From Mobula birostris (taxonomy: Eukaryota): a DNA stretch of 64,000 nt. The position numbers and the translations under genes were made by a program. Position 1 is the stretch's first letter. Each line of letters starts with the position of its first letter. The notes beneath the pieces were generated by a model that saw only the letters and a list, made by a program, of their open reading frames with translations, did no database searches and was not told the DNA's origin. The DNA lies in contig NC_092379.1 of the NCBI RefSeq assembly GCF_030028105.1, forward strand, positions 25,909,821 to 25,973,820. The letters are read 5' to 3'. Below, piece after piece: positions 7,855 through 37,629 of this stretch.

Positions 7855-10800
7855 GTATAAGACCGTAATACCATAAGACAAAGGAGCAGAAGTCGGCCAT
7901 TCGGCCCATCGAGTCTTCTCCGCCATTTTATCATGAGCTGATCCATTTTCAGTTTTAGTCCCACTCCCCCGCCTTCTCACCATAACCTTTGATGCTCTGG
8001 CTACTCAGATACTTATCAATCTCTGCCTTAAATACACCCACCCAGTGAATTGGCCTCCACTGCTGCCCGTGGCAACAAATTCCATAGATTCACCATCCTC
8101 TGACTAAAAAAAAAAACTTCTTCAATCTGTTCTGAATGGGTGCCCTCCAATCCTTAAGTCATGCCCTCTCGTACTAGACTCACCCATCATGGGAAACAAC
8201 GTTGCCACATCCACTCTTTCCATGCCTTTCAACATTCGAAATGTTTCTATGCGGTCTCCCCTCATTCATCTAAACTCCAAGGACCACAGTCCAAGAGCGG
8301 ACAAACCTTCCTCACATGTTAACCCGCTCATTCCCGGAATCATTCTAGTGAATCTTCTCTGTACTCTCTCCTACGTCAGCACATCCTTCCTTAAATAAAA
8401 AGACCAAAACTGCTCACAGTACTCCAAGTGAGGTCCCACCAGCGCCTTATAGAGCCTCAACATCACATCCTTGGTCCTATACTCTATTCCTCTAGAAATT
8501 CTTCACTACCGACTCAACCTGGAGGTTAACCTTAAGGGTATCCTGTCCGAGTTGTCCCAATTCCCGTTGCATCACAAAGCTTTGAATTCTTTCCCCATTT
8601 AAATCATAGTCTGCCCGTTTATTTCTTCTGCCAAGTGCATCACCATACATTTTCCAACACTGTATTTCATTTGCCACTTCTTTACCCATTCTTCCCATCT
8701 ATCCAAGTCTCTCTGCAGAATCTCCGTTTCCCCAGTACTACCGGCCCCTCCACCTATCTTCATATCGTCAGCAAACTTAGTCACAATGGCATCTATTCCA
8801 TAACGCAAAACGTTGATGTACAATGTTATAAGGAGCGGACCCAACACGGACCCCTGCGCAGTACCACTGGTAAGCGGCAGCCAACCAGAATAAGATCCCC
8901 TTATTCCCACTCTCTGTTTCCTGCCAATCTGCCAACGCTCTATCCACGTATGTAACTTTCCCGTAATTCCATGAGCTCTTATCTTGTTAAGTAGTCTCAT
9001 GTGTGGCACCTTGCCAAAGGGCTTCTGAAAATCCAAATATACAACATCCACTGCATTTCCATTGTCTAGCCTACCGGTAATTTCCTTAAAAAGTTGTAAT
9101 AGGTTTGTCAGGCAGGATTTTCCTTTAAGGAATCCATGCTGAGTTCTGCCTATCTTGTCATATGCCTCCAGGTACTCTGTAACCTCATCCTTGACAATCG
9201 ACTCTGACAACTTCCCAACCACCGATGTCAAGCTAACAGGTCTATAATTTCTTTTTTTGCTTCCTTGCCTCCTTCTTAAATTACGGAGTGACATTTGCAA
9301 TCTTCCAGTCCTTCGGAACCATGCCATAATCTATCGACTTTTGAAAGATCATCGCTAATGCCTCCACAATCTCCACAGCGACTTCCTTCAGAGCACGCGG
9401 GTGCACTCCAACTGGTCCGGGAGATTTATCTATCTTTAGACTATTCAGCTTCCCAAGTACTTTCTCTGTAGTAATTGTGACTGTGCACACTTCTCTTCCT
9501 TGCCACCCTTGAGTGTCCAGTATACTGCTGATGTGTTCCTCAGTGAAGATTGTTGCAAAATACTCGTTCTGTTCCTACGCCATCTCCTTATCTCCCTTTA
9601 CAATTTATCCAGCATCATTTTCTATCGTTCCATCTACTCTCACCTGTCTTTTATTCTTTATATACTTGAAAACGCTTTTTGTATCCTCTTTGATATTATT
9701 TGCTAGCTTCCTTTCAAATTTAATCTTTTCCCTCTTAATGACCTTCTTAGTTTCCTTTTGTAAGGTTTTAAAAACTTCCCAACCCTCTGTCTTCCCACTA
9801 ATTTTTGCTTCCTTGTATGCCTTCTCCTTTGCTTTAACCTTGGCTTGACTTCTCTTGTCAACCACGGTTGCATTTTTTTTCATTCGAAAATTTCTTCTTT
9901 TTTTTTGGAATATACCTGTCTTGCACCTTTCTCACTTCTCCCATAAACTCCAGCCACTGCTGCTCTGCCGTCTTTCCCGCCAGTGTCCCTTTCTAGTCAA
10001 CTTTGGCTAGTTCTCTCATGCCACTGTAATTTCGGCATGAGAGAATCAGGTTTCGGCTTCTCTTTTTTCTCAAATTTCACAGTGAACTCAATCATGATAT
10101 GATCACTGCCTCCTAAGAGTTCCTTCACCTGAATCTCTCTAATCACCATCGGTTCAATACACAATACCCAATCCAATACTGTCGATCCGCTAGTGGGCTC
10201 AAGAACAAGCTGTTCTCGAAAGCCATCTCGCAGACATTCTACAAATTCTCTCTCTTGAGATACAGTGCGGATCTGATTTTCCCAATCCACTCGCATGTTA
10301 AAATCCCCCACAATTATCATCACACTGCCCTTCTGACAACCCTTTTTTAATTTCCTGTTGTAAATTGTAGTCCACATCACTGCAGCTGTTTGGAGGCCTA
10401 TAAATAACTGCTATCAGCGTCCTTTTACCCCTGCGATTTCTTAGCTCAATCCATAAAGATTCTGCACCTTCCGATCCTATATCACCTCTTTCTAATGATT
10501 TAATATCTCTTACCAATTAAGCCACGCTTCCTGCTCTGCCTACCTTCCTATCCTTCCGATACATCGTGTATCCTTGGACGTTCAACTCCCAGAGACATGC
10601 ATCCTTTAGCCACATCTCAGTAATGACAGCAATAACATACCTGCCAATCTCTATCTGTACGACAAGATCATCCACCTTATTCGTTATGCTGCGTGCATTT
10701 AAGTATAACACCTTAAGACCAGTATTTTGTAATTTTCGCTTTGATTTCACTGCAACTTTATTGCACTGCAACTCATCCCAATGGCTACAAATTTGCCCCA

Positions 10801-20876: not shown

Positions 20877-22279
20877 AAAGACAGCGTTCTTCCGATTCCA
20901 GTTCCAGCTTTTTAAAACTTACTGTTAGAAGCTGTAATTGGATGCATTTCACCCATGAGAAATAGTGAGAAGTAAATATGCCAGTCCTCCCACATCCCGC
21001 AGGGAGTGCTCTCGAAAATTAAGATCCTGGTGAATATCCTCAACCAGAAGAGTCAATTGCTGACTCTTTCCATGCAGGTTGTATGGCCTGCTGAGTTACT
21101 ACTGCGTTTTGTTTGTATTGCGTTCAAATATTAGGCCAGGCACACTTCCAGTTATTCTGAACAAATATATAGAAGGAAAATCAATACATAAACTCTGGGA
21201 AAAAATATTTCCCTATACCCTTTCTCGTACTGAAGCCTATGCTTGTTGAAGCATTGAAGAGCCAATGCCTCAGGTTCGCTCTCTTACACTGATGACGCGA
21301 CCGAGGGCAGCTGCGCTCATCCCTACTTTATTGTAATTGCTTCTTAAAATCAATCCCCATCACTGATTGACCGTTTTTCATAAACCGAAATGATGGCTTA
21401 TGCATTCATTCGGGGAGCTCTGTGAGCTTTGTAATTCTGGTTAAAACACCAAACTGCCGCCATTTTGTGTCATGTGTACTCAACAGGCAAACTTAAGGGA
21501 GCTGCACCTTATCAGGTTTGGCATCGCCGAGTGGCCACAGTTTAAATGCAAATTTTATGACTTTTTATTTCCAACATTTCGCGTGTGCGACTTCACCATT
21601 CCGAAACCCATTTTTTCCCTTTTATAAGATTTTATTTCAGTATAGCAGGTGGCACAATACCCAACAATATATATATATATATATATATACACATAATCTG
21701 CTGCAGTGGTAGTACAAGGAAAATAATTTTTTGCGGAATAATTTCTGTAAGATCTCACCAGGTCCCAATAAGGGAATCATAGTCCAATCCAAACACAATT
21801 AAAAAAAAAACAACAACAACTGCACGAGCATTTGTATTCCCAATCGACTGTGGCACTTCTGCATTTCCACTTCGACAACTTTGTCCAGCCTCACAAGAGT
21901 TAATAAGTTTTATGTAGTATTACTTTCGTTTTGCAGAGCACTGCTTCAAATGCTATATGATCTGTTCTGAATTTGCCACTGTCTTGTGCATAAGTTGTGT
22001 TTTTTCTGTGTTTCCTTGCGGCCTCTTTAAATCCAGGAAATCTGGGTTGAACTGGAAACATGGGACAGTACACATTGAGCCTGTGGAATACGTTGCGGCA
22101 CAGACCAATACAAGCACCTCATGATTAACCTAATGCTTGACATACCCTGGTGATGCCTCTGTACTCAACTTTTCCTTTTTCCATATGTGAACGGTTCTGG
22201 TGGTGTTGTGTATCGCTAACATTTGCTGCGGCGTGCAGATGAGAATTTTTGAAGAATATTAATATTATTTTCCAAGAAT

Positions 22280-22422
22280 GCTACTAATACTACTACAACG
22301 ACTACTACTAGCACCTCTATTACTACTGTTACCTCTACTACTAATAACAATAATAATAATAATAATAATAGGTATTATTATTATTATTATTATTATGATT
22401 ATTATTACAAAATAATAATAAA
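22280..22422. repeat. Compound trinucleotide repeat (ACT)n-(AAT)n-GGT-(ATT)n with inverted symmetry
   Basis: An AAT run is followed after a 3-nt spacer by an ATT run. Confidence 0.9.
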
Positions 22423-22553
22423 TATAACACATGACACCTCACTAAAAGTTTCCTCCACCCAACTTACTGTCAGCCATCTTTCTCGGGCGTTGACTTTTGC
22501 CACAATGGGTATCAGCTTTATTTTTATGCTAATGACACTTTTCCATTCTCCAG

Positions 22554-22637: not shown

Positions 22638-23196
22638 GTACGGTTGCTTGTGATAGACCTTTTGTCAAACACACACAGATTGAACCTGTTTGGCGACAGT
22701 TTTATTCTCATTCCACCTTCTGGGAAAAGAATTCGTGACTGAATGGTGCATCCAAAAGGACCAAAATGCCATCACACTCCTCTTAGTCTGAGGGAAGGCT
22801 TATTAACTCATCCCGCGTACCTGCCATCATGATTAGGGAAGAGACTGTGTTCCGTCACGAATGGTCTAAGAAGTAAGACTTTCTGTGCCGGCTTAGAGCA
22901 CACGTGTCAACATCGAGAAATACAAAATAAACACCTACTATTTTCGAAATATCGTCCACTTCATGGCGAAGGCGACAGATGCATCCGCTTATAGGACATT
23001 TTCCTTACAGATATTGAACGTTAGGCGGCCATAGGGGGGATTTCATCACCCGGTAGAAAAAGAATTAAAACCACCTGTTGTCCCTCAGAAGTCTGTCCTT
23101 TAGAGTTCACTGTCCAACTCTGAAGTAAATTCAACCATAAATTTGAAGGTTGTGAGCTCCATTTCCTCGTTACTTAAGAAATCTTCCCCGCTGACG

Positions 23197-23248
23197 ATGG
23201 GCCTCTTTATGTTTTTCACTCTAGGGCTCTGCATATTAGTTTCTTTAC
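23197..23248 (+). pseudogene. Leader (signal peptide) exon of the NAR-TCR-type V
   Basis: ATG at 23197 gives MGLFMFFTLGLCILVSL, then a phase-1 donor C|GTGATT and an about 80-nt intron with a poly-T tract before the V. Confidence 0.8.
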
Positions 23249-23328
23249 GTGATTCGCCTCTGACCCAATCTCAATTCCACCCCGCCGTCCCACTTTTTTT
23301 TTTTTAATTCCTGTGTTATTTGAGTTAG

Positions 23329-23588
23329 ATAGTGACTCAGAGTCCATCGACTGCAAACTTGAAGCAGTGTCATTCCGTTACTATCGCCTGCAATTTCCAA
23401 CCACCATCTTCTGGTGAGTACAACTTTGTGAATGGAAAATTCTTCAAACAGACCTGGTCAGCGGCCGAAGGGAAGGAGAACACCACCGAGGGGTGAATTG
23501 TTACTAGGATTAAGAAAATTGACACGCAGTTTTCGGTGAAAATTCGGGATCTCGGAGTGGAAGACAGCGGCATTTATTACTGGTGAAG
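23329..23588 (+). pseudogene. NAR-TCR V: IgNAR-like V segment (NAR-TCR V), pseudogene
   Basis: IVTQSPSTANLKQCHSVTIACNFQPPSSGEYNFVNGKFFKQTWSAAEGKENTTEG*IVTRIKKIDTQFSVKIRDLGVEDSGIYYW*. The 48 residues from FFKQ to YYW align without gaps to a recalled IgNAR V pattern (WYRK...GGRYVETVN...FSLRI.DL.VEDSGTY.C), i.e. CDR2 is absent. Lesions: TGA at 23494, an extra G in the Cys codon (TAC TG[G]T GAA), and a disrupted acceptor/frame at the start. Confidence 0.88.
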
Positions 23589-23626
23589 CACAATGGTGGT
23601 CGTCAGCTTCCCGTTGTACAAAAAAA
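23589..23626 (+). other. V recombination signal sequence, 22-bp spacer
   Basis: CACAATG (23589-23595), 22-nt spacer, ACAAAAAAA (23618-23626). Confidence 0.88.
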
Positions 23627-23954
23627 AAAAAAAAAAAACTTTTGCCGTAGATTATTCCTGAAGCAGAGAGAGCAGAATGGATCTGCTGGTAAAGTAGACA
23701 GCCACGCCTCGCTCCATCCGTCCTACAGTCTAGATTATAGTCAGTTTCTTGTGGTTTACTTACAGTCTATATATTCCCACCCGGATTCTGCTGCGTTCCC
23801 AGAGGTTTGTGTCAATGAATGTCCACAGGGAATTAACAAAAAAAACACATTCCCGTCGCGAAATACATATGGATTCGATTCTCGGCACTTTGTTCCAGAA
23901 AAGACCATCGTTGGGAATGTGCTTCACTGTCGCCTCATTCATCGCTTCCAAGCG

Positions 23955-24027
23955 GGGCTTTGAAGTTGCCCTGAGGCACTGTGTATACTTTGGGACACAC
24001 TCAGTGGAAGGGATCTGAACAAAAATA
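23955..24027 (+). other. D segment TATACTTTGGGACACA (23984-23999) with 5' and 3' 12-type RSSs
   Basis: 5' RSS: degenerate nonamer GGGCTTTGA/GGCTTTGAA, 12-13 nt, perfect CACTGTG (23977-23983). 3' RSS: CTCAGTG (24000-24006), 12 nt, ACAAAAATA (24019-24027). All three D frames are open (YTLGH, ILWDT, YFGT). Confidence 0.75.
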
Positions 24028-24358
24028 ATAATATTCAAATAAATAACTTAGTTAACTATGTATTCTCGATGTCCTAAACAAAATTTACGAACTTGGCGAT
24101 GGTCGCTCAGTTATCTGATTAGATAAGTTTTATTTTCTATATTTCAGATATATTTTAACGGACACCGTTGCTGATTTGTTTCCGTTCTGAGTCGGTCTGT
24201 GCCGCGTGTACAGGCTTCAATTTAATGAGGCCCTGCTTTTTCAGATCATATCGACCCGTCCGTAAATTAGGAACACTGCATGCTATCTGTTGAATTAGCG
24301 TTAGAGGAAACATTGGGAATCCTATTCTGACGTTTGTTATGCAGATTCACGTGACTGT

Positions 24359-24455
24359 AGATGTTGTATTCGGGAGATTGAAAACAGGGTCAGTGCGTAT
24401 ATGTGGAAGAATGATAAACTTGTTGGAGCAGGGACGAAGGTCACGGTGAGTCCCG
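24359..24455 (+). pseudogene. J segment with degenerate 23-RSS and mutated splice donor
   Basis: Coding 24398-24455 gives YMWKNDKLVGAGTKVTVSP (x-G-A-G-T-x-V-T-V). RSS: AGATGTTGT (24359-24367), 23 nt, CAGTGCG (24391-24397). The phase-1 donor reads G|ATATGT instead of G|GTATGT. Confidence 0.78.
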
Positions 24456-24639
24456 ATATGTATCCACAAACATCGCCGTTTATTCCAATTTCTCCCCATA
24501 TAGAATTTCATGTAATAAATGATCGAATAATCAAAAAATCTTTATTTTTTAAAAGTCCAATATAAAATCTCGTTTCTGCAAATTGTGTCAGAGGCGTCGG
24601 TAGCACAAGGTGTCTTAGACAATATTCAATAGACAATAG

Positions 24640-26030
24640 ACAATTGACAATAGGTGCAAGAGGAGGCCATTCGGCCTTTAGAGCCAGCACCGGCATTCAC
24701 TGTGATCATGGCTGATCATCCACAATCAGCACCCCTTTCCTGCCTTCTCCCCATATCCCTTGACTCCGCTATCATTAAGAGCTCTATCTAACACTTTCTT
24801 GAACGCATCCAGAGAATTGGCCTCCACTGCCTTCTGAGGCAGAGCATTCCACAGACCCATAACTCTCTGGTGTAGAAGTTTTTTTTTTTTTTTCCCGAAC
24901 TCCGTTCTAAAAAGCCTACCCCTTATTCTCAAATTGTGGCCTCTGGTTCTGGACTCCCCCAACATCGGGAACATGTTTCCTGCCTCCAGCGTGTCCAATC
25001 CCTTAATAATCATATATATTTCAATCAGATCTCCTCTCATCCTTCTAAATTCCAGTGTATACAAGCCCAGTCGCCCCAATCTTTCAACGTATGACAGTCA
25101 CGTCAACCCCGGAATTATCCTATTGAACGTCCGCTGCACTCAAGTATGTCCTTCCTCTAATTTGGATTCCAAAACTGTACACAATGCTCCAGGTGTGGTC
25201 TCACCAGGGTCCTGTACAACTGCAGAAGGACTTCTTTGCACCTATACTCAATTCCCCTTGTTATGCAGACCAACAGGCCATTAGATTTTTTTTCATTTCC
25301 TGCTGTACCTGCATGCCTACTTTAAGTGACTAATGAACAGGGACATCGAGATCTCGTTGTACTTCCCCTGTTCCTAATTTGACATAATTCAAATAGTAAT
25401 CTGCCTTCCTGTTCTTGCCACCAAAATGGATAACCTCACATTTATTCACAATAAACTGCATCTGTCATGCATCTGCCCACTTACCCAACCTGCCCAAGTC
25501 ATCATTCATTATCTCAACATCCTCCGCACATTTCACACTGCCGCCCAGCTTTCTGTCATCTGCAAATTTGCTAATGTTACCTTTTATCCCTTCATCTAAA
25601 TCATTAATCTATATATATTGTAAATAGCTGCTGTCCCAGCACGGAGCCCTGAAGTACCTCATTAGTCACCGCCTGCCATTCTGAAAATGACTCGTTAATC
25701 CCTACTCTTTGTTTCCTCTCTGCCAACCAATTTACGATCCATGTCAGTACCCTACCCCCAATACCACGTGCTCTAATTTTGCCGACTAATCTCCTATGTG
25801 GGACCTTATCAAAGGTTTCTAAAAATACTGGTACACTAGATCTACAGAGCCTCCCTTGTCCATTTTCATAGTTACATCCTCAAAAAATTCCAGAAGATTA
25901 GTCAAGCATGATTTCCTCTTCGTAAATCCATGCTGACTGGGACCGAGCCTGTTACTGCTAACCAAATGTGCCGCTATTTCATCCTTTATAATTGACTTCA
26001 GCATCATCCCCACCACTGATGCCAGGCTAA
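24640..26030 (-). mobile_element. CR1 LINE 3' half (RT and 3'UTR)
   Basis: QHGFTKRKSCLTNLLEFFEDVT; RLGLYTLEFRRMRGDLIE...RGHNLRIRG. Confidence 0.9.
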
Positions 26031-26034
26031 CTGG

Positions 26035-26175
26035 AGTCAGTCAAACACAATCTGGCTTGTCATCCTGTTGAAGGGTCTCGGCCTGAAATATTGACTGTGT
26101 TCTTTTCCATAGATGTTGCCTGGCCTGCTGAATTCCTGTGTGCGTTGCGTAGATTTCCAGCATCTGCAGGTTATC
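26035..26175 (+). repeat. Penelope-like 3' tail fragment with degenerate hammerhead
   Basis: CCTGTTGAAGGGTCTCGGCCTGAAATATTGACTG...GATGTTGCCTGGCCTGCTG matches 17480-17600. Confidence 0.75.
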
Positions 26176-26589
26176 TCTGGTTTATGGCTTGTCATCTGTT
26201 GAGTGGACACAGGGGCACAGAAATAGCTCCAGTTTGGACGCTCTGCCACATGGCCCCTGACACTCGGGTGGATTGCACCAACTCTGACGCTTCTCTCTTG
26301 AGCAGTTGTAAACAGGCAACACCATGATTTGAGGCTTTATCCTCCTACAACTGAGGTCATGCAGCTTCCCTACCATATGCCAATAAATCACTGAATCGGA
26401 CTTTCAGCATTCAACTCTAATAATATTCAACAGGATCTTCCAATAATTATTATTTAATTATCATGATTGCTTATAAGATCAGCCACACAAAACAAATTCA
26501 AATACTTGCAATAAAAAAAACAAAATAAATTGATACTGTATTTTGCTCATCAAGTTCCCTATTCCATCTTTCTTCTCATACTTATTCAA

Positions 26590-27135
26590 ACATAATCATC
26601 ATCATCATCATCATCATCATCAGGTGCCATGCCCAGATTGAGCTTTGGCTGCAATGGCCAGACACTCCTGTTTTGCGTCAAGTGGATTAATTCATTGGTA
26701 TTCATTTCCGGTTCTCTGGCAGCTGTCTCCATCATCATGTCCCTGTCTTCCTCTTGCTTTCTTCCTTTCAATCTTTCCCATAATCACCGTGCACTCTAAC
26801 TGGACTTTCCTAATCACATGTTGAATGAAGTTACCTTGCCTTTTCATGATTTCATACATTATTTCTATTTTTGTGTTTACCGTGCTCATGACATGCTCGT
26901 TAGATATTCGTTTCATCCATGAGATTATTTGCATCATCATCAAAGACCGCGGCTCTGCTGCTACAATTCGTTTCCTCATATTACTAGATATTGCCCAACT
27001 TTCTGAACGATACAACATAACTGGATAAACGTAACATTTCAGTACTCTGAGGCGTGTTTTAATGCCTAGTTTAGTCTTCAAGCATAATAGCCCATCAAAA
27101 AACACTTCTCCTGAAGTCCATCTCTCAAGTTTGAA
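26590..27135 (-). mobile_element. RTE-clade LINE 3' fragment with (GAT)n tail
   Basis: RLRVLKCYVYPVMLYRSESWAI...GKIERKKARGRQ, with a (GAT)n tail on the minus strand at 26595-26620. Confidence 0.75.
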
Positions 27136-27939
27136 AAGCTTTACCGTCTACAACAGGTATCCTTTTTCCGTAATGTCCAGCAGCAAGTGATCTCCATTTA
27201 ATAGTTCTTCGATATTATTGAAAGTCACGTAATATAAGGGAGTAGACTGAAAACTGGACAGATAGTCTAGTAAACTAACTAGACCACTGAATATATACTG
27301 TGAAGTTTGCTGTTTTGCAACAGTTGTAGAATGCAATACAATAATATTATAAAATACTGTAGGAAATTATATAAATTAAATTAGCACAAAAGAGAGCAAA
27401 ATAGTGTTTTAATTTTGATGGGTTAACTCTCCAAGCAGAAATCTGATGGTGCAGCGGAAGAAGCTGTCTTAAACATTGAGTTAGAAGCAACGCTATGAAG
27501 AAAATTGCAGGGATCTTGAGAAAGAAGGACCAGGAGGGGCAAGGTTCAAAACTTAAGATTAAGAACGAGGCAAAAGTAACTTTGCTGTTAGTTTGTTCTT
27601 TATAGGTCATGGACAATCCATAGGAAGGAGCACTCTGGGAGCTTAGAGAAAGAAAATAATTGATAATTTACGCAACTTTCCAATCAAACTCAATCTTGAT
27701 AGAAGCAGACTAGATGGCAAGGTGGCACCAGTGAACCACTGCAACATTCTGCAGGTTACATACAATACGTCGAAATATACTTTTAGAATTGCTCTCACTG
27801 TAACCTGCATTTAATATTCCTTTGTTTAAGCAAGGCAATTTTAAATTGATTTAATGGACTACAGATTTCACTGTCTTATGAAGGATTTGGCAAGCTGAAC
27901 TCTCAAGCAAGCAGCCACAGCACATTTAAGTGGACGAAA

Positions 27940-29640
27940 GCTCATTGCCATGGCCAGAAGTCGAGGCGGGGACAGGATTCCACCGTCAAAGACTCCAGTT
28001 CCATACCCACAACATCACTGGCCTCACGAATGAGTTTGTTGATCTTGTTGATGCCTGATATCCTCAGCCTGCTGCCCCAGCGCACAACAGCAAACATGAT
28101 AGCACTGGCCACCATAGACTCGTAGAACATCCTCAGCATCGTCCGGCAGATGTTAAAGGACCTCGGTCTCCTCAAGAAATAAAGACTGCTCTGACCCTTC
28201 TTGTAGACAGCTTCACTGTTCTTTGACCAGCCCAGTTTATTATCAATTCCTAACCCCAGGTACTTGTAATCCTCCACCATGCCCACACTGACACCCTGGA
28301 TGGAAACAGGTGTCACTGATGCCTTAGCCCTCCTCAGGTCCACCACCAGCTCCTTATAATTTTTCACATTAAGCTGCAGATAAATCTGCTCACACCATGT
28401 GACAAACTTCCCCATCGTAGCCCTGTACTCAGCCTCATCTCCCTTCCTGATGCATACAACTTTAGCAGAGTTATCAGAAAACTTCTGAAGCTGGCAAGAC
28501 TCTGCGTAGTAGTTGAAGTCCGAGGTGTAGATGGTGAAGAGAAAGGGAGACAAGACGGTCCCCCCGTGGCGACCCAGTGCTGCTAACCACTCTGTCTGAC
28601 ATTTGGTGTTGCAAGCACACGTAATGTGGTCTGTCAGTCAGATAATCAATAATCCATGACACCAGGAAAGCACCTGCATATCTACCAGCTTCTCCCACAA
28701 CAGAACAGGGCGGATAGTGTTGAACGCACTGGAGAAGTCAAAAAAACATGACCCTCACAGTGCACGCTGGCTTGTCCAGGTGAGCGTAAACAAGTTTCAG
28801 CAGGTAGATGATGGCATTCTCAACTCCTAGTCGGGGCTTGTAGGCGAACTGGAGAGGATCTAACTGTTGCCTAAACATTGGCCGGAGCTGCTCCAGAACA
28901 AGTCTCTCCAGCGTCTTCATGATGTGGGAGGTAAATGCCACCGGTCTGTACTCATTGAAATCCCTGGGGCGCAGCCACTTCGGCACACGGACGAGGCAGG
29001 GCATCTTCCACAGCACAGTAACCCTCTGGAGACTCAGTCTCAGGTTGAAGACATGGTGAAGTACTCCATGTAGCTGGGGGGCATAGGCTTTGAACACCCT
29101 GGTGCTGACACCATCTGGGCCTGCAGACTTGCTTGGGTGGACGCGTTTCAACTGCCTTCTCACCTGTTCAGCTATGATGCCCACCGTGGTGGTTACATGT
29201 GGTGGAGGGATGTAGTCATGAGTGCAGGGAGGGAGGCTGTGAGGAGGGGTAGGAGGGGAGAGTGAAGTATGTGTTGGTTGGAGGCCGACATCTTATGAAT
29301 CGTGTGGGGGATGGGCAGGGGTCACAATGTCAAATCTGTTAAAGAACAGGTTAAGTTCGTTGGCCCTGTCCACACTACCTACAGCTCCTCTGTTGCTAGC
29401 TTGCCGGAACCCAGTGATGGTCCTCATCCCGCTCTAGACCTCTCTCATGTTGTCCTGCTGAAGTGTCCACTCAAAATTCCTCCTATACCTATCTTTAGCC
29501 TCCCTGATCCTGGCTTTCATGTCCCTCTGTATTGTCATCAGCTCCTCCCTATTTCCATCTCTAAACTTCAGTGACTGGAAAGTCGCATCACATTTGTCAT
29601 CCCATCTCTATCCGAAGGGCTCTGCCGGGTTGAGATATTC
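27940..29640 (-). mobile_element. Rex1/Babar-type non-LTR retrotransposon RT fragment
   Basis: PSKSAGPDGV, EYRPVAFTSHIMKTLERL, LDPLQFAY, SPFLFTIYTSD, QKFSDNSA, LYFLRR.RSFNIC. Confidence 0.85.
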
Positions 29641-29644
29641 TCCC

Positions 29645-31290
29645 ACATCCCGTCATTTCCTCCCTTTTCCCCTCTGTCTCAGGGGAGGGTAGTCAAGCAG
29701 AAGCTTGTTCAAGGGATGACTCATCTTGACGTAGCCCATCACGAATCTCCGATAGTACCAACAGAACCGTAGAAATGAGCGCAGAGCACTCACGGTCTGG
29801 GGCCTCGTCCAGGTGGTCACAGCTTCAATCTTATCCGGGTCAGTCACTACACCATATCGCGAGACGATGTGTTCAACATAGCTAACAAACGTCTGGAAGA
29901 ACTGGCACTTGTCCAGGGAAAGCTGCAACCCATCCTGCTTCAGCCGGTTGAACACCTTCATTAGTCTCGCTTCGTGTTCTTCCAAGGCGGATCCAAATAC
30001 TATGAGGTTTTGCAAATATATCAGCATTTCGATCAGGTTCATATCCACCACCGTCTTCTCCATGACCCTCTGGAAGATGGCAGGAGACCCCGATATGCCC
30101 TGGACTATTCTTTCGAACTTGTAAACGCCCAAAGCGCAAATGAAGGCCGTTTTCTCCTTATCGGCCTCACTCATCCGGATCTGGTAATACCCATTCCTCA
30201 AATCCAGCGCGCTAAACCACTTCGCCCCATTCAGACAGGCTAGCGCATCTTCCACCCGGGAGACCGTGTCCTGAACTGGTTCCAGTGCGCCTGTTCAGTG
30301 TTCCATAGTCCACACACGTACGGACCTTCCCATTCTTCCTCTGGGCCACTACGGTACAAGACGCATAAGGGCTTCGGGACTCCGTGATGATCCCAGCCTC
30401 CTTCAACTTGCCCAAAATGCTGCCGCACATCTTCCACATCTGCAGGGGACAGTCGCCATGATGGTTCTGTAAACAGAATATTCTCAGTCATCCGTATAGT
30501 GTGGCGACTGTTCTTGGAACAAACCACATCTAACTCGTCGAGGAAAAAAAAAAAAAACATCTCTTATCCTTAACATCTTCTCCACCAGCTTCCGCTTCCA
30601 ACCCTCCGGCACAGGTGATGACTCAAATTTAAAAGCTTCAGCAGTCAATTTAGGCCTTTTTCCCGACAGCTCTCCCCCAACTGGCCTCACGGGGGCGCCA
30701 TGCATCACCGTCACCGGGAACAAACGCACCAGAGGCATTCCTCGCTTAAAGATAAACTCCTGTTCAGCAGTGTTCCTGACGCTCACTGCCAGCCTGCCTG
30801 CGTGTACCACCGATGACTTCTGCAACCCACTCTCACCAGCACCCCAGCAGGGAATCTCGACTCCCCCTCGAGATCTTCCGGGTTGTCCACTAAAAGGGCT
30901 TCCCCCTCAGACACCCTTGGGAACCTATGGATCCCCGTCACACTCGCTATTTCACCCGGGCGCACCACCTTGGGCTTCGCCTAGCACACCACAGAGTGCC
31001 TCGTTCATACGCCGCGTCCAGCCCAGGACGACCCCACGCTTCCTCAAAAGCAGCTCGGAACACTGGGTGCTCTGACAGGGGCTCTAAAAAGTCTTCACCC
31101 CGCTGATTCCCGTTGCCTAGGGTGAATAGCCGTCGATACCGCCAAACAGTGCAAATGCTTTTGTGCGGATAAGGTGTGAGTGGCCCTATGATCAGCCACA
31201 ACAAGAATATGAAAAAAAAATATACAAAGTACGAGTAAAAAATTGTACTTTATAGCAAAATTTGGTGATAGATTAGCAGCAACAAATAAT
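29645..31290 (-). mobile_element. Ty3/Gypsy pol fragment (RT with YLDD altered to YLQN)
   Basis: GIITESRSPYAS, GKVRTCVDY, GAKWFSALDLRNGYYQI, KEKTAFIC, LSLDKCQF, LRSFLRFCWYYRRFV. Confidence 0.88.
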
Positions 31291-32173
31291 GGAAAAGGCG
31301 CCACATAAGTAACTTATCTGTCTTGTGCACATATTATTTTAATACGTTGGATCTCACGCCACCGATTCCACCCTCAATGTCCTTCCGAGACTCCTGCCAT
31401 TCTCCGAACCCCCAAGGTCCGGTATCCGCCGCCCTGGAACAGCCGTTCGTTCCTCACAAGTCCGTCTTCTCTGCTCGCCTCCCGAAAAAGCCCGCACTCC
31501 TCAACTCAGCACACATATACGAGATTAGAGAACATGACTTCCATTGGCTAACAAAGGAATAAAGTTTCCATTATCACACTGTATATCACACAGATATCGC
31601 TGTTACAGAGAACACCATGCTTAGCAGTTAACAGTACGATAAACCATTGGTAATAAGTTATTAGAAGTTATCAGTCCATCTAGTATTAATCAGAGCCCGA
31701 CACTAAGTACTCTTATTTAGCATTTGCATAGATTGTTGCCTTCTGCATTCTGGTTGAATGCCCAACTTGGACTCCTTTTATTGATTTTGAAAACATTTTA
31801 TTCTGTAAACGTGAGAAATCTGTGTGGAGGAATTTTCAAGCATCAAAGGGTTCAAATGGACTAAATGGAATAAAAACCTGAAGCCTGTGAAAGGCGAGAG
31901 GTTGGCGGCACCGAATGCACCAGTCTGTCCCTATTTTTGTAATTTTTAACCACCGATCAACTTATTTCTGCTACAGCGACTTCCTTACCGTGATTAAAGG
32001 GCAACAGAATGTACTGAGTCTCCGCACAAAGGTCATGAATAAGAACTGAATGTGTGTGTTTGTCCTCCTCTTTTGATTTCAACCTCAAGGCCTGCAACCC
32101 ACTGCCTCATCAATGGAATGTGCTGTGATCATGAGTGCGTGAACAGCTGATTAACTAACAGATATCCCCGGCT

Positions 32174-33700
32174 TGTCGAGCTTACTGATATGTACTCAAC
32201 TGTATAAACGAAGCTGTACTTGAAGCTGTTTTCGGAACTCTGACACCCCGCTCTCAGGGAAGAGTTTCCCATGGTATAACGAATAAAGATTGGTTGAAGC
32301 GATCCGTGTCTGAGTGCGGTTCCTTAGTATTTCTCCGACAGTTAATGGCGACGAGGATGGGATCCCTATAGAGTCCGCTTGAGCAAAATCAAGATAGCGG
32401 CTCTTACGCTTGAGCAGAGGCAACATAGTGGAGAGTACGCTTGAGTGGAAGCATGGCAGCGGCTCTTACGCCATACTAGGAAGATAATCCAGGAGAAGCA
32501 ACTGGGCCTGCGCTCAGCTGAAAGGGAGGACAGGGAGATTGACGCTGTGCTGCGGGTTAGGGAGTGCAGCGGGCGAGCTCTTAGCTGAAAGGGAGGGCTT
32601 CGCCCGATTAAGGGGTGCTACGGATTAATAGCAGCACGGAATGACGTTACAGCACCTAGTCTTGTGAAACTCACCGGTCAGTGTGTGCGTGCGCTTGTGT
32701 GGTTGTGTGAAAGTGTAGTGTAGTTAACTCTCATTACAGAATAATAGGAACTACCAGTAGAAGTGGGGCCGCTAGATTGTCTCTTGCTGGGGAATCTAAG
32801 ACTCCAGGAACCCTAAAAGTCGGCAAGGTAGCAACGCCAAGAATGAAGAGGTTAAAGAAAGCTCGACAGATGACAGCAGACCCGCTGGTACCTCCGGGAT
32901 GAGCAGCAGACACTGTCATTAAGGAAACGGGAGATGGCCGATATGCAGTAACTTTTAGCAGTGACTTGAATGAGTGGTCACATGGCGATTGGCTGCTTGA
33001 GGGAAGTTTTAATTTGAGAGCAATCCTCTAGAGAGGTCGCTCCCTAAATGGGGTCGGCGACCCAAATTGGGATGCTGATTACATGTTAGGACGTTGTCAA
33101 CTAAAGAAGAAGGTGGTTAAAAGTCACTAACCTCCAAAGAAAAGGATATTAAGCAGCCTGAAACAGAGAAAGCTGGGACTGAAACGAAACCTGGCATGGA
33201 AATTTAGCCCCAACTCCCTGTACAGGCCAGTAACCCATTGGCACCCAGTAGTGAAATAAACGAGTTAATAATGAATACTAATGCCTTGGGACGACCCGCA
33301 CCCACCCCTTACAACCCCCCATGCCAGAGGTTCAGGCACCTGATACCCTCAGCGGAGCAAATATCTCTGTTACGAGAGAAGGTTCTCAGGAACGAGGAAA
33401 TGAAGCTAAGGGAGCTGAAGGAAGTGTTCGTAATACTCCAGATGAGAGGGAAAAAGACGCCTAAAAAAAAAAAAAAAAAAAGAAGAGGCAGGAAGAGAGA
33501 AAAAGAGAATGGAGGAAAAGCTTTTAACAGACAATTTCATTATATCTAGAACAGCCCCGCTTACCCTGCTGGGTCCACAGACCCTTTATCAATTAAGGGC
33601 AACAGTGCTCTGTACAGCAGAATGTATATAAACAGATTTTCCTCAGATTAGAGTTCCTCAAATGCAAAAAAAAAAAAAAAAAGGGCGAGAAAAGGGCTGT
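32174..33700 (+). mobile_element. LTR, PBS and gag-like remnant of a retrovirus-like element
   Basis: TGTCG...AATAAA...CGACA LTR-like unit (32174-32340). PBS TGGCGACGAGGATGGGAT (32346-32363). Gag-like motifs DWLLEGSFNL (32987-33016) and PAPTPYNPP (about 33295-33320). Confidence 0.65.
32346..32363 (+). promoter_or_regulatory. Primer-binding site complementary to the 3' 18 nt of tRNA-Ser(GCU)
   Basis: Reverse complement ATCCCATCCTCGTCGCCA equals the 3' end of vertebrate tRNA-Ser(GCU) plus CCA as recalled. It lies 5 nt after the LTR end. Confidence 0.8.
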
Positions 33701-33789
33701 TCAGAACCCTTATCATCTGTTGATAGCTGGATGTAATCTGTATGCTGGACAATGTCTCAGAGACTGTATGATATATTGATAAGACGAGC

Positions 33790-35325
33790 CAACCTCCACA
33801 CGCAATATCTGCAATACTTGGTTAATAGCAGCCGGGAAAAGACGCAGCTCCTTCGCACGGTATATTGCAGCTCCATTGCAAATATCACTCCGCTACTTAA
33901 GAATGGGGCAAAGAAGCAAAAAGGAAATTATAGACCTGTTAGCTTGACATCGGTGGTTGGGAGGCTGTTGGAGACGATTGTCAAGGATGAGGCTACGGAG
34001 TACATGGAGGCATATGACAGGACAGGCAGAACTCAGCAGGTTTCCTTAAAGGAAAATCCTGCCTGACAAACCTATTACATTTTTTCCCCCTCAGGAAATT
34101 AAAAGTAAGCTAGGCAAGGGAGATGCAGTGGAGGTTGTATATTTGAATTTTCAGAGGTGCCAAACAGGAAGCTACTTAACAAGATAAGAGCCCATGGAAT
34201 TACGGGAAAGTTACCTACGTCGATAGGGCGTTGGCTGATTGGCAGGAAACAGAGAGTGGGAATAAAGGGATCCTATTATAGTTGGCTGCCGGTTACCAGT
34301 GGTGTTCCACAGGCGTCCGTGTTGGAGCTGCTTCATTTTACGTTGTACATCAACGATTTGATTTATGGAATAGATGGCTTTGTGGCTAAATTTGCTGATG
34401 ATACGAAATAGGTGGAGGGAACGGTACTGCTGAGGAAACAGAGACTCGGCAAAGAGACTTGGATAGATTGGAAGAATGACCAAAGAATTGGCAAATTAAA
34501 TGCAATGTTGGAATGTGTATGGTTATGCACTTTGACAGAACAAATAAACGGCAGACTAATATTTAAATGGGGTGAAAATTCAAACGTCTGAGATGCCACG
34601 GGACTTGGGAGTCCTCGTGCAGAATACCCTTAACGTTAACATCCAGGTTGAGTCGGTGGTGAAGAAGGCGAATGCAATGTTGGCATTCATTTCTGGAGGA
34701 ATCGAGTGTAGGAGCAGGGATGTGAGGTTGAGGATCTAAAGGCGCTGGTACGACCTCACATAGAGTATTGTGCGCAGTTTTGGTCTCCTTATTTAGGAAA
34801 GGATGTGCTGACGTTGGAGTGGGTACCGACAAGATTCAGTAGAATGATTCCGAGAATAAGAGTGTTAACATTAATGGAACGTTTGCCCGCCCTTGGACTG
34901 TATTCCTTGGAGTTTAGAAGAATGGGAGGGGACCTCATAGAAACATTTCGAATGTTGAAAGGCATGGACAGAGTGGATATGGCAAAGTTGCTTCCCACGT
35001 TGGAGGAGTCTTGTACGAAAGGGCATGAATTAAGGATTGAAGGGACCCCAGCTGATCAGAATGCGAAAAAAAAAAAAAATAGCTAGAGGGTACTGAATCT
35101 ATGGAATTTATTGCAAAGGGCGGCAGTGGACGTCAAGTCATTGGCTGTATTTAAGACAGAGATTGATAGGTATCGGTGTAGTCAAGGCATCAAAGTTTAT
35201 GTTGAGAAAGCGGGGGAGTGGGACTAAATGTGTGAATGGATCAGCTCATGTTGAAATGGCGGAGCAGACTCGATGGCCCGAATGGCCGACTTCTGCTCCT
35301 TTGGCTTATCGTCCTATGGTCTATT
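33790..35325 (+). mobile_element. CR1 LINE 3' half inserted in the LTR-element region
   Basis: NYRPVSLTSVVGRLLE, VAKFADDTK, LGLYSLEFRRMGGDLIE, CR1 3'UTR. Confidence 0.9.
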
Positions 35326-35899
35326 ACACATTACAAACTGACCTGCATTATGACCAGGCTGTAAACCCTTATCTAAACGGTAAAGCTGAAGGCAACACCG
35401 TATGTGTATTTTTGTCCCGAGGGATTAGAGCTCTTGGTAGATTTAGTGGAATATCAGAAAATAAGATTCCGACTAGGGAACTCCTCAATGCCTCATTTGG
35501 CAGTGGTCATGAACCCACCAGAGAAGCCTAAAGATATCGGGACGATGGTAGAACGATTGCCGAAAGAAGCCAAGGCTGTTTATGCTATACCTCTCCCGTT
35601 ACTGGGACCGGAAGCCCGAATAGAATTCTTTAATGAAAAGGATGAGACAATTATGTTAAAGTCTGAGAACTACGAAACATCCTTTGAAAAGCAACAGCCA
35701 CCACCAGAAGACCCTCTACATCCTCCTAAAGCCTTAGTACCGGTACTAGGGAACCTATGCAACATAGCAATATTGTGGGAATGGCCCAAACAGCTCCCGA
35801 GCATAAAGTTACTCTAAAAAAAATGTGCCACTGTTTTGTTTTAAACAGTACCGTATAGTTGTTGATGCTGAAGATGGTGTCGCTCCAGTAATTGCCACA

Positions 35900-35995
35900 T
35901 AATTGCTGTAAGACTTCCCCGTGGTATCACGATTAATGATTGGTTGAAGTGATCTCCTCCGTGTCTGAGTGTAGTTCCTTAGCATTTCTCCGACA
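35900..35995 (+). repeat. Second copy of the LTR 3' end
   Basis: GATTGGTTGAAG...CCGTGTCTGAGTG..GTTCCTTAG.ATTTCTCCGACA matches 32287-32340; no PBS follows. Confidence 0.7.
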
Positions 35996-36928
35996 CTATA
36001 CCACTAGAAATTGAAACATGATTTTGCTTATGGTAACCTTTATGCACTTTGATAAAGAACTTATTTTGAAATTTAACATTTGATACAGAAAAAAAAAGAT
36101 GAATAGAGAATGAATGGCGAGGGGGACAAATGTTTTCCTCGTAAGCTAGGACAGTATGCAGTTGAGTTTAGTAGATGGACCATCAAGTGTGAAAAGCTAT
36201 GTCATAAAACCCGGTTTAGGTAGACATTTTTTACTAAGAATTTAATAATGCTTAGGGGGTGCAAACAACCGTCAGAAAGAACCAATATTAGCACAACAAT
36301 TGTAGGGGTAAAAGTCTGCTTGCCTTCATTTCTTTAAAACTTTTCTTCAATAGTATTGTGGCGATCGCGTACGGATCATTGACTGAATAACTAATACATC
36401 GTGTCCTATTTTTATACATCAGATGTAACTGCACACCTATGCAAGAGGTAAAGCAACGAAATTTCACCTGGAAAGTGGGAGAATGTTTTACTTCCAAGTT
36501 CAGAAAATGACAGATGTCCCATTCAATGGTTAAAGTATGTTACAAATTTTAATAGATTGTTGCATGGGTGATTAATACTCATGCCACCGGGAGTGCTTAA
36601 TAGAATTGCGCTCAGAATGTTCTGTTTAAATCCTGTTAAATTCACCAAGAACGGAATGTATTCGTTATTTGCACGTATGTACTATATCCCTGATGGATTT
36701 GAACGGGCAGTGAACATTTGACATATCATGAAATGTCTGCATCATCCACGTATAAGAAAGGTGATATATGTTCCATTTTCATTGAGTTGTTGTTTCTTTT
36801 CTCGTATTATATAGATGACAGAACGTCAGTGAGGGACTCCGCCCAAACCTCATGTCAGTAATGCTGGGAATAAAATTGATCACATTGTATCCTGTTTTAT
36901 CGGAATGGTAAATGAGCGAACTGATACA

Positions 36929-36968
36929 ATGTCTCTACTGATACTTCTATTGATTTCCATTGCAATTG
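36929..36968 (+). CDS. Leader exon of the TCR V gene
   Basis: MSLLILLLISIAI followed by a consensus phase-1 donor G|GTAAGT; 319-nt intron to the V exon. Confidence 0.88.
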
Positions 36969-37287
36969 GTAAGTCTTGATACATAGTTCTGATGACTGAT
37001 ATGGATTATTATCAGGACTCTTTCTGAACCAATACAATTGTTTCGAAGTCTCGTGTGGTCCCCAGAGTTTAACTAAATAATATGCCCATTGAAGTATAAT
37101 TGGAAATAATCAGTCCTGATCGGAATTACGGTGAAATACACTGTGACAGATTGAGTTTGACATATAAACATCAGGCTTTCGTTTAGACAGCTAAATCTGT
37201 TCAATGCAGAACACTCTTTGTAATGGCTTCTGAAGTTTTGCTGGTTGAAAATAAAATATGTTTGACGAATTATAATGCTTATCGCAG

Positions 37288-37591
37288 ATACAATTCAATG
37301 TCCATCTGTAACACAGTATCAGCGTGAAGTGAAGGTTACTAAAGGAAAGGATACAGAGGTGAGTTGTATTTTCAACAGCAGTTCCAATAATCCGGATATT
37401 TATTGGTACCGCTTGTATCCGAGCAAAGCACCGCAATTTATACTGTACCGGGACAACACAAGGAAAATTGACGCCGATTTTACAGTGGGGAGGTTCGATG
37501 CTCGACTATTTAAAAATTACCATGCGATTCCTTTGACAATATCTGCAACGAAGATTGAAGACAGCGCAATCTACTTTTGTGCATTAGGTAC
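37288..37591 (+). CDS. TCR alpha/delta-type V exon, apparently functional
   Basis: Acceptor CGCAG|AT in phase with the leader. DTIQCPSVTQYQREVKVTKGKDTEVSCIFNSSSNNPDIYWYRLYPSKAPQFILYRDN...GRF...LTISATKIEDSAIYFCALG has the canonical Cys, Trp and D-S-A-x-Y-F-C, with no stops. Confidence 0.93.
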
Positions 37592-37629
37592 CACGGTGTG
37601 TGAAAGCTGCCTCAGTTCGTACAAAAACC
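37592..37629 (+). other. V recombination signal sequence, 22-bp spacer
   Basis: CACGGTG (37592-37598), 22 nt, perfect ACAAAAACC (37621-37629). Confidence 0.93.

What the first reader, a model, noticed from the sequence alone, without database searches (positions are those of the whole stretch)
23197..24461. Complete NAR-TCR-type leader-V-D-J mini-cluster
Seen: within 1.3 kb a leader, a V lacking CDR2 that aligns without gaps to the IgNAR FR2-FR3 pattern, a 22-RSS, a D between two RSSs, and a J with an xGAGT motif like IgNAR J. None of this is in the ORF track because it is broken. Established: NAR-TCR is the cartilaginous-fish TCR delta isoform with two V domains, whose distal V is assembled from an IgNAR-related V-D-J cluster and spliced onto a rearranged supporting V-delta. 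Inference: this is such a cassette. The system is known, but this copy and its architecture may be unannotated.
Basis: partly seen in the sequence, partly recalled or inferred. Interest (0 to 1): 0.85.

Follow-up and report, generated by a model that had tools for sequence, protein, structure and literature searches.

The report
Decayed orphan NAR-TCR V-D-J pseudogene cassette
This 1.3 kb stretch is a real copy of the antibody-like leader-V-D-J unit that cartilaginous fish stack on a T-cell receptor delta chain. It is a dead copy, with stop codons, a lost cysteine, damaged cutting signals and no partner V-delta, so it is an ordinary pseudogene of a known system.

Summary
It carries the NAR-TcR marks (Cys in the a-b loop, FFKQ instead of WYRK). 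In a tree it sits inside the batoid NAR-TcR V clade. A conventional TCR V-alpha/delta gene lies 13 kb downstream.

The cassette is neither complete nor working.
- The V has an in-frame TGA at the conserved Arg and an in-frame TAG near its start.
- A 16-19 nt deletion turns Cys104 into TGG-TGA.
- The D 3' heptamer and the J RSS are degraded.
- The homologous J splice donor reads AT.
- No leaderless supporting V-delta exists anywhere in the 64 kb window.

A related species' orthologous contig shares the TGA and the deletion, so the decay is old and not an assembly error. No listed RNA run holds this copy; paralogous transcripts read AGA (Arg) at that codon.

The scan has already reported at least eight NAR-TCR cassettes elsewhere on this genome piece, and two were followed up as intact. 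Verdict: a pseudogene member of a known system, of low interest.

The parts
23197..23248 (+). Leader exon of the NAR-type V: ATG at 23197, 17 codons plus 1 nt, possible phase-1 donor GTGATT at 23249-23254.
   Evidence: Homology to NAR-TcR leaders. The donor assignment is ambiguous because about 90 nt of the intron are missing relative to Pristis and Amblyraja.
23249..23328 (+). Shortened leader intron. The homologous acceptor (CCAG in intact copies) reads CTGT here.
   Evidence: Four-way DNA alignment. The stretch from TTTAAT to GTGAC is 29 nt in ours and in Pristis (my own count on the rows), so it aligns without gaps.
23312..23588 (+). NAR-TcR-type V exon, now a pseudogene. Lesions: TAG at 23326-23328 (CAG in intact copies); TGA at 23494-23496 (Arg of GGRF); Cys104 codon reads TGG at 23581-23583, followed by TGA at 23584-23586, after a 16-19 nt deletion.
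   Evidence: Paralog contigs read AGA at 23494-23496 and continue TGTCAAGCT after 23582.
23589..23626 (+). V RSS: heptamer CACAATG, 22-nt spacer, nonamer ACAAAAAAA. The nonamer runs on into an A-tract ending at 23639.
   Evidence: 0.01 expected by chance.
23956..23983 (+). 5' D RSS: nonamer GGCTTTGAA, 12-nt spacer, heptamer CACTGTG.
   Evidence: The non-consensus nonamer ending TTTGAA is conserved in Pristis and Amblyraja.
23984..23999 (+). D segment, 16 nt, with the conserved TTTGGG core.
   Evidence: Aligned to the 15-nt D of Pristis L001 and L003.
24000..24027 (+). 3' D RSS: heptamer CTCAGTG (CACAGTG or CACAGCG in intact copies), 12-nt spacer, nonamer ACAAAAATA.
24360..24397 (+). Degraded J RSS: nonamer GATGTTGTA, 22-nt spacer, heptamer CAGTGCG. 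Intact copies have GGTTTTCTC or GGTTCTTGT, a 23-nt spacer, and CACTGTG.
24398..24455 (+). J segment (YMWKNDKLVGAGTKVTVSP). The homologous phase-1 donor position 24456-24457 reads AT. A consensus-like GTGAGT at 24446-24451 lies inside the J codons, in phase 0.

Best explanation
This is a pseudogene relic of a NAR-TcR distal cassette (leader, NAR-type V, one D, one J) in the V region of a ray's TCR alpha/delta locus.

How intact cassettes work (established knowledge): RAG joins V-D-J of the distal unit using V-22/23, 12-D-12 and 23-J signals. The J is then spliced onto a leaderless, separately rearranged supporting V-delta, giving a TCR delta chain with two V domains.

This copy most likely arose by duplication of such a cassette and then decayed (inferred). 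Shown here:
- It has two or three in-frame stops.
- It has lost Cys104 through a short deletion.
- Its D 3' heptamer and J RSS have mutated.
- Its homologous V acceptor and J donor are lost.
- It has no supporting V-delta.

It therefore cannot contribute a functional chain. At most its still-good V RSS could be cut by RAG to give non-productive joins (inferred).
For: Homology
- A search of 1.84 billion proteins with the V piece found Pristis XP_051882926.1, a two-V NAR-TcR model.
- 28 further models from 8 elasmobranch genera and a chimaera share the layout.
- Our V is 42-48% identical, ungapped, to the batoid distal Vs.

Diagnostic residues named in PMC1845163
- Cys in the a-b loop: ours reads KQC.
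- No Trp of WYRK: ours reads FFKQ.
- vNARs in the PDB read tGES and WYR at these positions.

Tree
- Our V lies inside a 97/90-supported batoid NAR-TcR V clade. Its terminal branch is 0.99 against a median of 0.11.

Lesions
- All were read off alignments with three intact cassettes.

No supporting V
- tblastn of 28 models and blastn of three J-downstream regions find nothing in the window.
- The positive control, Pristis against Amblyraja, gives 74-75% identity over about 400 nt.

Age and reality of the lesions
- The orthologous contig of organism C spans the stretch with 99 substitutions. It keeps T at 23494 and shows no difference at 23581-23586.

Expression
- No contig was laid for RNA runs X13 and X15.
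- X14 gave two short contigs under 90% alike, which read AGA at the stop codon. They are paralog transcripts.

Context
- An intact leader-bearing V at 36930-37629 has TCR V-delta3, V-delta1 and V-alpha among its best PDB matches.
Against: - The V RSS, the 5' D RSS and the reading frame of the J are still good.
- A phase-1 donor-like GTGATT survives after the leader.
- No IgNAR V sequences could be fetched into the tree, so exclusion of IgNAR rests on diagnostic residues, D number and context.
- The RNA data are three small runs kept as contigs, of unknown tissue. 'None was listed' is not absence.
- Intact cassettes of this same genome could not be read here, so lesions were called against other species.
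Confidence: 0.88

Rival explanations
1. A functional, complete NAR-TcR cassette whose apparent breaks are sequencing or assembly errors.
For: All elements are in the right order and spacing, and the V RSS is near consensus.
Against: Source-sample contigs are identical to the window. A contig from a different species shares the TGA and the Cys104 deletion. There are too many independent lesions: TAG, TGA, the deletion, two heptamers, a nonamer, an acceptor and a donor. No supporting V is present.
Confidence: 0.02
2. A relic of an IgNAR (antibody) cluster rather than of NAR-TcR. IgNAR loci lie near TCR alpha/delta in elasmobranchs.
For: The NAR-TcR V profile's best single-domain PDB matches are vNARs, E about 1e-25. 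The RSS geometry is IgH-like. [quoted passage not shown]
Against: Ours has the a-b loop Cys, FFKQ instead of WYRK, VTQ, and the NAR-TcR CDR1 length. It has one D. The J is homologous to NAR-TcR J, ending VTV(T/S)(A/P). No Ig C-domain ORF lies downstream. The tree places it inside batoid NAR-TcR V.
Confidence: 0.03
3. A cassette whose supporting V-delta was moved far away by transposon insertions, or which uses the conventional V at 37.3 kb.
For: Repeat and reverse-transcriptase fragments start about 150 nt after the J and fill much of the 12.5 kb up to the next V.
Against: The V at 37.3 kb has its own leader and intron and is only 31-36% identical to supporting Vs, which are conserved at about 75% nt between Pristis and Amblyraja. 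Even with a partner, the distal V is dead.
Confidence: 0.05
4. A non-rearranging IgSF V domain, or a chance V-like ORF.
For: None beyond the general V-set similarity.
Against: RSSs sit at V, D and J in homologous positions to intact rearranging cassettes.
Confidence: 0.01

Closest known systems
NAR-TcR (NARTCR) distal V-D-J cassettes of cartilaginous fish (Criscitiello et al. 2006, as summarised in PMC1845163 and PMC12227049). Genomic examples read here: Pristis pectinata CM019866.1 (L001, L003) and Amblyraja radiata CM021380.1 (L002).
   Same: Split leader; CDR2-less V with a-b loop Cys and no Trp41; V-22 RSS; a single D with 12/12 RSSs and a TTTGGG core; J of the GxGTxVTV type; location among TCR V-alpha/delta genes.
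   Different: In-frame TAG and TGA; Cys104 deleted; D 3' heptamer CTCAGTG; J heptamer CAGTGCG with a poor nonamer and a 22-nt spacer; homologous J donor reads AT; no leaderless supporting V-delta. The supporting V lies 1.4-3.9 kb after J in the three intact loci.
IgNAR V (vNAR) of sharks, PDB entries such as 7spp, 8hgi, 2ywy
   Same: The same short V fold without CDR2. FR3 motifs such as FS(L/V)xIxDLxVEDSG.
   Different: vNARs have WYR and no a-b loop Cys in the PDB alignments. From my own knowledge, not tested here, IgNAR clusters have three D segments, a J ending VTVN, and C exons downstream. None of these was seen here.
V pseudogenes of TCR and Ig loci in general
   Same: Retains a recognisable leader, V and RSS but carries stops and lacks a canonical Cys. 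It persists across species.
   Different: Here a whole V-D-J mini-cluster decayed together, and its obligate partner exon is missing.

Membership tests
NAR-TcR distal cassette | NAR-type V domain without CDR2 (short C'-C'' region) | tested here: met
   Ungapped 83-aa alignments to batoid NAR-TcR V. The NAR-TcR profile aligns end to end with vNARs.
NAR-TcR distal cassette | Typical split leader on the distal V | tested here: met
   MGLFMFFTLGLCI is homologous to MGILLVFTLCVCL. The intron is shortened and the homologous acceptor is lost.
NAR-TcR distal cassette | Cysteine in the a-b loop (interdomain bond) | tested here: met
   Ours reads KQCHS where the family reads KECQS. The feature is named in PMC1845163.
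NAR-TcR distal cassette | Lacks the canonical Trp of WYRK | tested here: met
   Ours reads KFFKQ. F38 is invariant in 24 models. vNARs read WYR.
NAR-TcR distal cassette | Own D and J with RSSs allowing a separate V-D-J rearrangement | tested here: inconclusive
   The elements are present and homologous, with V-22 and 12-D-12 geometry. However the D 3' heptamer is CTCAGTG and the J RSS is CAGTGCG with a poor nonamer, so it is probably not recombinable.
NAR-TcR distal cassette | J ends in a phase-1 splice donor that joins it to the supporting V | tested here: not met
   The homologous position 24456-24457 reads AT. It is GT in L001, L002 and L003. The GTGAGT at 24446 is in phase 0.
NAR-TcR distal cassette | Leaderless supporting TcR-delta V with a CDR1 Cys a few kb downstream | tested here: not met
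   No match in the 64 kb by tblastn or blastn, with a working positive control.
NAR-TcR distal cassette | Open V reading frame with the Cys23-Cys104 pair | tested here: not met
   TGA at 23494; TGG-TGA at 23581-23586. Cys23 is kept.
NAR-TcR distal cassette | Lies in the TCR alpha/delta locus | tested here: inconclusive
   A V-delta/alpha-type V lies at 37.3 kb, and earlier notes place other cassettes on the same piece. No D-delta, J-delta or C-delta lies in the window.
NAR-TcR distal cassette | Expressed in rearranged TCR delta transcripts | tested here: inconclusive
   No listed RNA run holds it; only paralog contigs were laid. The data are small and kept as contigs.
IgNAR cluster | V with Trp41 (WYR) and no a-b loop Cys | tested here: not met
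   Ours has FFKQ and a Cys.
IgNAR cluster | Three D segments, with C-domain exons downstream of J | tested here: not met
   One D by homology. No C-domain motif or Pfam Ig hit in downstream ORFs. That scan is crude.

The most novel reading that the evidence does not exclude
The cassette is an 'orphan' duplicate made without its supporting V-delta. That would show that the L-V-D-J unit can be copied independently of its partner, which is the kind of step proposed for the transfer of a NAR V unit between the TCR delta and IgW/IgNAR loci. Alternatively, the dead V has persisted across species because it serves as a sequence donor for neighbouring NAR-TcR Vs.
Probability: 0.08. Interest if true: 0.4.

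Novelty: new member of a known kind. Interest (0 to 1): 0.12.

Why it matters
It matters little on its own. It adds one pseudogene to the NAR-TcR repertoire of a ray and should be labelled as such in an annotation of the TCR alpha/delta locus, so that it is not counted as a usable cassette.

Two by-products are more useful.
- Germline cassettes in sawfish show V-22 / 12-D-12 / 23-J signal geometry. That is the IgH-like pattern, not the TCR-delta pattern.
- RefSeq names for NAR-TcR models in several elasmobranch genomes are misleading.

Tried and rejected
- Pfam and PDB searches with the two V pieces alone were too weak to classify the V. Pfam gave V-set E 0.0027 for the second piece only. The PDB gave vNAR E 0.012 for the second piece and nothing useful for the first.
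- I tried twice to fetch IgNAR V sequences for the tree with the search for homologous proteins, once with a short NAR V query and once with a 24-sequence alignment. Only NAR-TcR-type Vs and mouse VH came back. IgNAR was therefore compared only through the PDB alignments.
- The top hit of the representative search, P0001, is an 854-aa tandem-repeat protein that matches a 21-residue stretch. It is a chance match and was set aside.
- The original NAR-TcR paper (PMC1458790) and Ott et al. 2021 (PMC7909615) are not held. Whether the RSS geometry is already published could not be checked.
- A weak tblastn hit at 4121-4171 (E 0.07) has stops on both sides and no V features. It was rejected as a supporting-V remnant.
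- The first MAFFT alignment suggested that the leader donor is deleted. By eye, GTGATT at 23249 may be the retained donor after an internal intron deletion, so I leave this lesion as ambiguous.
- The genomic DNA for a shark cassette (Cetorhinus) could not be fetched.

Full report
**What is there**

The plus strand at 23197-24461 reads as follows.
- An ATG-initiated hydrophobic leader, MGLFMFFTLGLCI.
- A short intron.
- A V-like frame, IVTQSPSTANLKQCHSVTIACNF...GKFFKQT...EG*IVTRIKKIDTQFSVKIRDLGVEDSGIYYW*.
- CACAATG, 22 nt, then ACAAAAAAA.

About 390 nt further on lies CACTGTG, a 16-nt segment, then CTCAGTG-12-ACAAAAATA. About 370 nt after that lies a J-like YMWKNDKLVGAGTKVTVSP.

A six-frame motif scan finds only this V end, one other V end at 37.5 kb, and only this J in the 64 kb. 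The pattern CACRRTG-N22-ACAAAAA occurs twice, each time directly after a V exon, against 0.01 expected from shuffles.

**What it is related to**

A search of 1.84 billion representative proteins with the first V piece found a 304-aa Pristis pectinata protein, XP_051882926.1, named 'immunoglobulin kappa light chain-like'. Its sequence has three parts: a NAR-type V, a J, and a second V with a Cys in CDR1. That is a NAR-TcR gene model.

Searching with it returned 28 two-V models from Pristis, Amblyraja, Leucoraja, Scyliorhinus, Heterodontus, Cetorhinus and Mustelus. Single-V fragments came from Chiloscyllium and Callorhinchus.

All share SVTQSP..KECQS..TITC, FF(K/R)Q in place of WYR, GGRFVV, YYC(Q/K)A, and a J reading G(S/T)GT.VTVTA. 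A leaderless V beginning ADS, with SGFC in CDR1, follows.

These are the marks listed for NAR-TcRV and its supporting TcR-delta V in PMC1845163: a leader, a Cys in the a-b loop, and no Trp of WYRK; and for the supporting V, no leader and a Cys in CDR1.

Our V carries KQCHS and KFFKQ. It aligns ungapped at 42-48% identity to batoid distal Vs and at 33-41% to shark ones. The NAR-TcR V profile hits vNARs best among single domains in the PDB. Those vNARs read tGES and WYR at the two diagnostic places.

A maximum-likelihood tree places our V inside a 97/90-supported clade of Pristis NAR-TcR Vs within the batoid group. The outgroups were supporting Vs, the neighbouring conventional V and a mouse VH. 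Our terminal branch is nine times the median. IgNAR V sequences could not be fetched for the tree, and that is a limit of this test.

**Anatomy against intact cassettes**

I fetched the genomic loci of two Pristis models and one Amblyraja model (L001, L003, L002) and aligned them with the window. The two Pristis cassettes have:
- a leader with donor GTGAGTACC;
- a V exon ending TATTACTGTCAAGCTGAGTACA..TGG..;
- a V RSS of CACAG(T/C)G-22-ACAAAAAC;
- a 5' D RSS with a conserved odd nonamer ending TGAA and a spacer of 11-12 nt;
- a 15-nt D with a TTGGG core;
- a 3' D RSS with a 12-nt spacer;
- a J RSS, GGTT(T/C)T..-23-CACTGTG;
- a J ending ..VT(V/F)TA plus one nt, then donor GTAAxx.

A leaderless supporting V follows 1.4-3.9 kb after J in all three loci.

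The geometry V-22 / 12-D-12 / 23-J is the one the scan's sister note on this stretch proposed. It holds in the two Pristis cassettes.

**Lesions in the window's copy**

1. The acceptor that is CCAG, GTAG or ACAG in intact copies reads CTGT.
2. The CAG of SQSVTQ reads TAG (23326-23328).
3. The Arg codon of GGRF reads TGA (23494-23496).
4. A 16-19 nt deletion after TATTACTG turns the Cys104 codon into TGG, followed directly by TGA (23581-23586).
5. The D 3' heptamer is CTCAGTG.
6. The J heptamer is CAGTGCG, the nonamer is GATGTTGTA, and the spacer is 22 nt.
7. The homologous J donor position reads AT (24456-24457). The GTGAGT that the eye picks out at 24446 is simply the codons Val-Ser, and it sits in phase 0.

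The leader donor is ambiguous. About 90 nt of intron are missing, but GTGATT at 23249, in phase 1, may be the retained donor.

**The missing partner**

tblastn of all 28 models finds the distal V at 23.3 kb and the conventional V at 37.3 kb. It finds nothing like a supporting V. blastn of the three J-downstream regions finds only transposon matches. The same search finds the supporting V exon at 74-75% identity over about 400 nt between Pristis and Amblyraja.

Repeat sequence begins about 150 nt after the J. The V at 36930-37629 has its own leader, a phase-1 intron and a perfect-nonamer RSS. TCR V-delta3, V-delta1 and V-alpha are among its best PDB matches, so it is a conventional V, not a supporting V. 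No C-domain exon was seen downstream.

**Is the damage real and old?**

Contigs of the probable source sample match the window exactly. That is not independent evidence.

A 1590-nt contig from a different species (organism C, run X9) is collinear with the whole stretch, including the non-coding spacers, with 99 substitutions. At 23494, a high-depth paralog contig reads A while the low-depth orthologous contig keeps T. No difference is listed at 23581-23586.

Paralog contigs in both species continue TGTCAAGCTGTGTACA after 23582, which is the intact Cys and V end. The stop and the deletion therefore predate the split of the two species.

**Expression**

None of the three RNA runs of this species was listed as holding the stretch. 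When they were laid on it, two runs gave nothing. One gave two short contigs under 90% alike that read AGA at the stop codon, so they are transcripts of intact paralogs. This is weak negative evidence only.

**Conclusion**

The word 'complete' and the high interest are not. This is a decayed, partnerless pseudogene copy of a known system.

Earlier notes of this scan list at least eight other NAR-TCR cassettes on the same genome piece, from 1.24 Mb before the window to 4.4 Mb beyond it. Two were followed up as intact.

Noticed in passing
window 36930-37629 (+): An intact conventional TCR V-alpha/delta-type gene. The leader exon is 36930-36969 with donor GTAAGT; the V exon runs from 37287; the RSS is CACGGTG-22-ACAAAAACC at 37592-37629. 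TCR V-delta3, V-delta1 and V-alpha are among its best PDB matches.
   Followed up: partly
L002:4852-4961 (Amblyraja radiata CM021380.1): In this skate cassette the 5' D RSS (GGATTTGAA-12-CAACGTG) is followed by one continuous 76-nt coding stretch that runs through the J to the donor GTAAGT. There is no 3' D RSS and no J RSS. It looks like a germline-joined D-J.
   Followed up: partly
P0003, P0006-P0032 (RefSeq models from Pristis, Amblyraja, Leucoraja, Heterodontus, Cetorhinus, Mustelus, Scyliorhinus): NAR-TcR cassettes are annotated under unrelated names: 'immunoglobulin kappa light chain-like', 'lachesin-like', 'T cell receptor alpha chain MC.7.G5-like', 'Ig heavy chain Mem5-like', 'uncharacterized'. 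The models join unrearranged germline V to J.
   Followed up: partly
L001 and L003 (Pristis pectinata CM019866.1): Intact germline NAR-TcR cassettes use V-22 / 12-D-12 / 23-J spacers. This is IgH-like geometry rather than the TCR-delta pattern. The 5' D nonamer is a conserved non-consensus motif ending TGAA.
   Followed up: yes
window 23618-23639: The V RSS nonamer runs into a tract of 20 A. Intact cassettes have ACAAAAACC here, so this is a homopolymer expansion.
   Followed up: no
window 22734-22940 vs L003:3228-3434: A 209-nt block upstream of the leader is 67% identical (E 6e-10) to a block upstream of a Pristis cassette. It is either part of the duplicated unit or a shared repeat.
   Followed up: no
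window 24600-36900 and most of the rest: The window carries a heavy load of reverse-transcriptase and LINE-like fragments on both strands, for example 8602-9330 (-), 24726-25079 (-), 34109-35083 (+), 51969-52436 (-) and 57617-58554 (-). A simple repeat lies at about 22253-22500.
   Followed up: no
runs X5, X6 (organism B): Low-coverage DNA runs labelled as another organism hold the D-J part at about 98-99% identity. They share two differences with organism C (24103 T>C, 24418 A>T), so the window's alleles there are derived.
   Followed up: no
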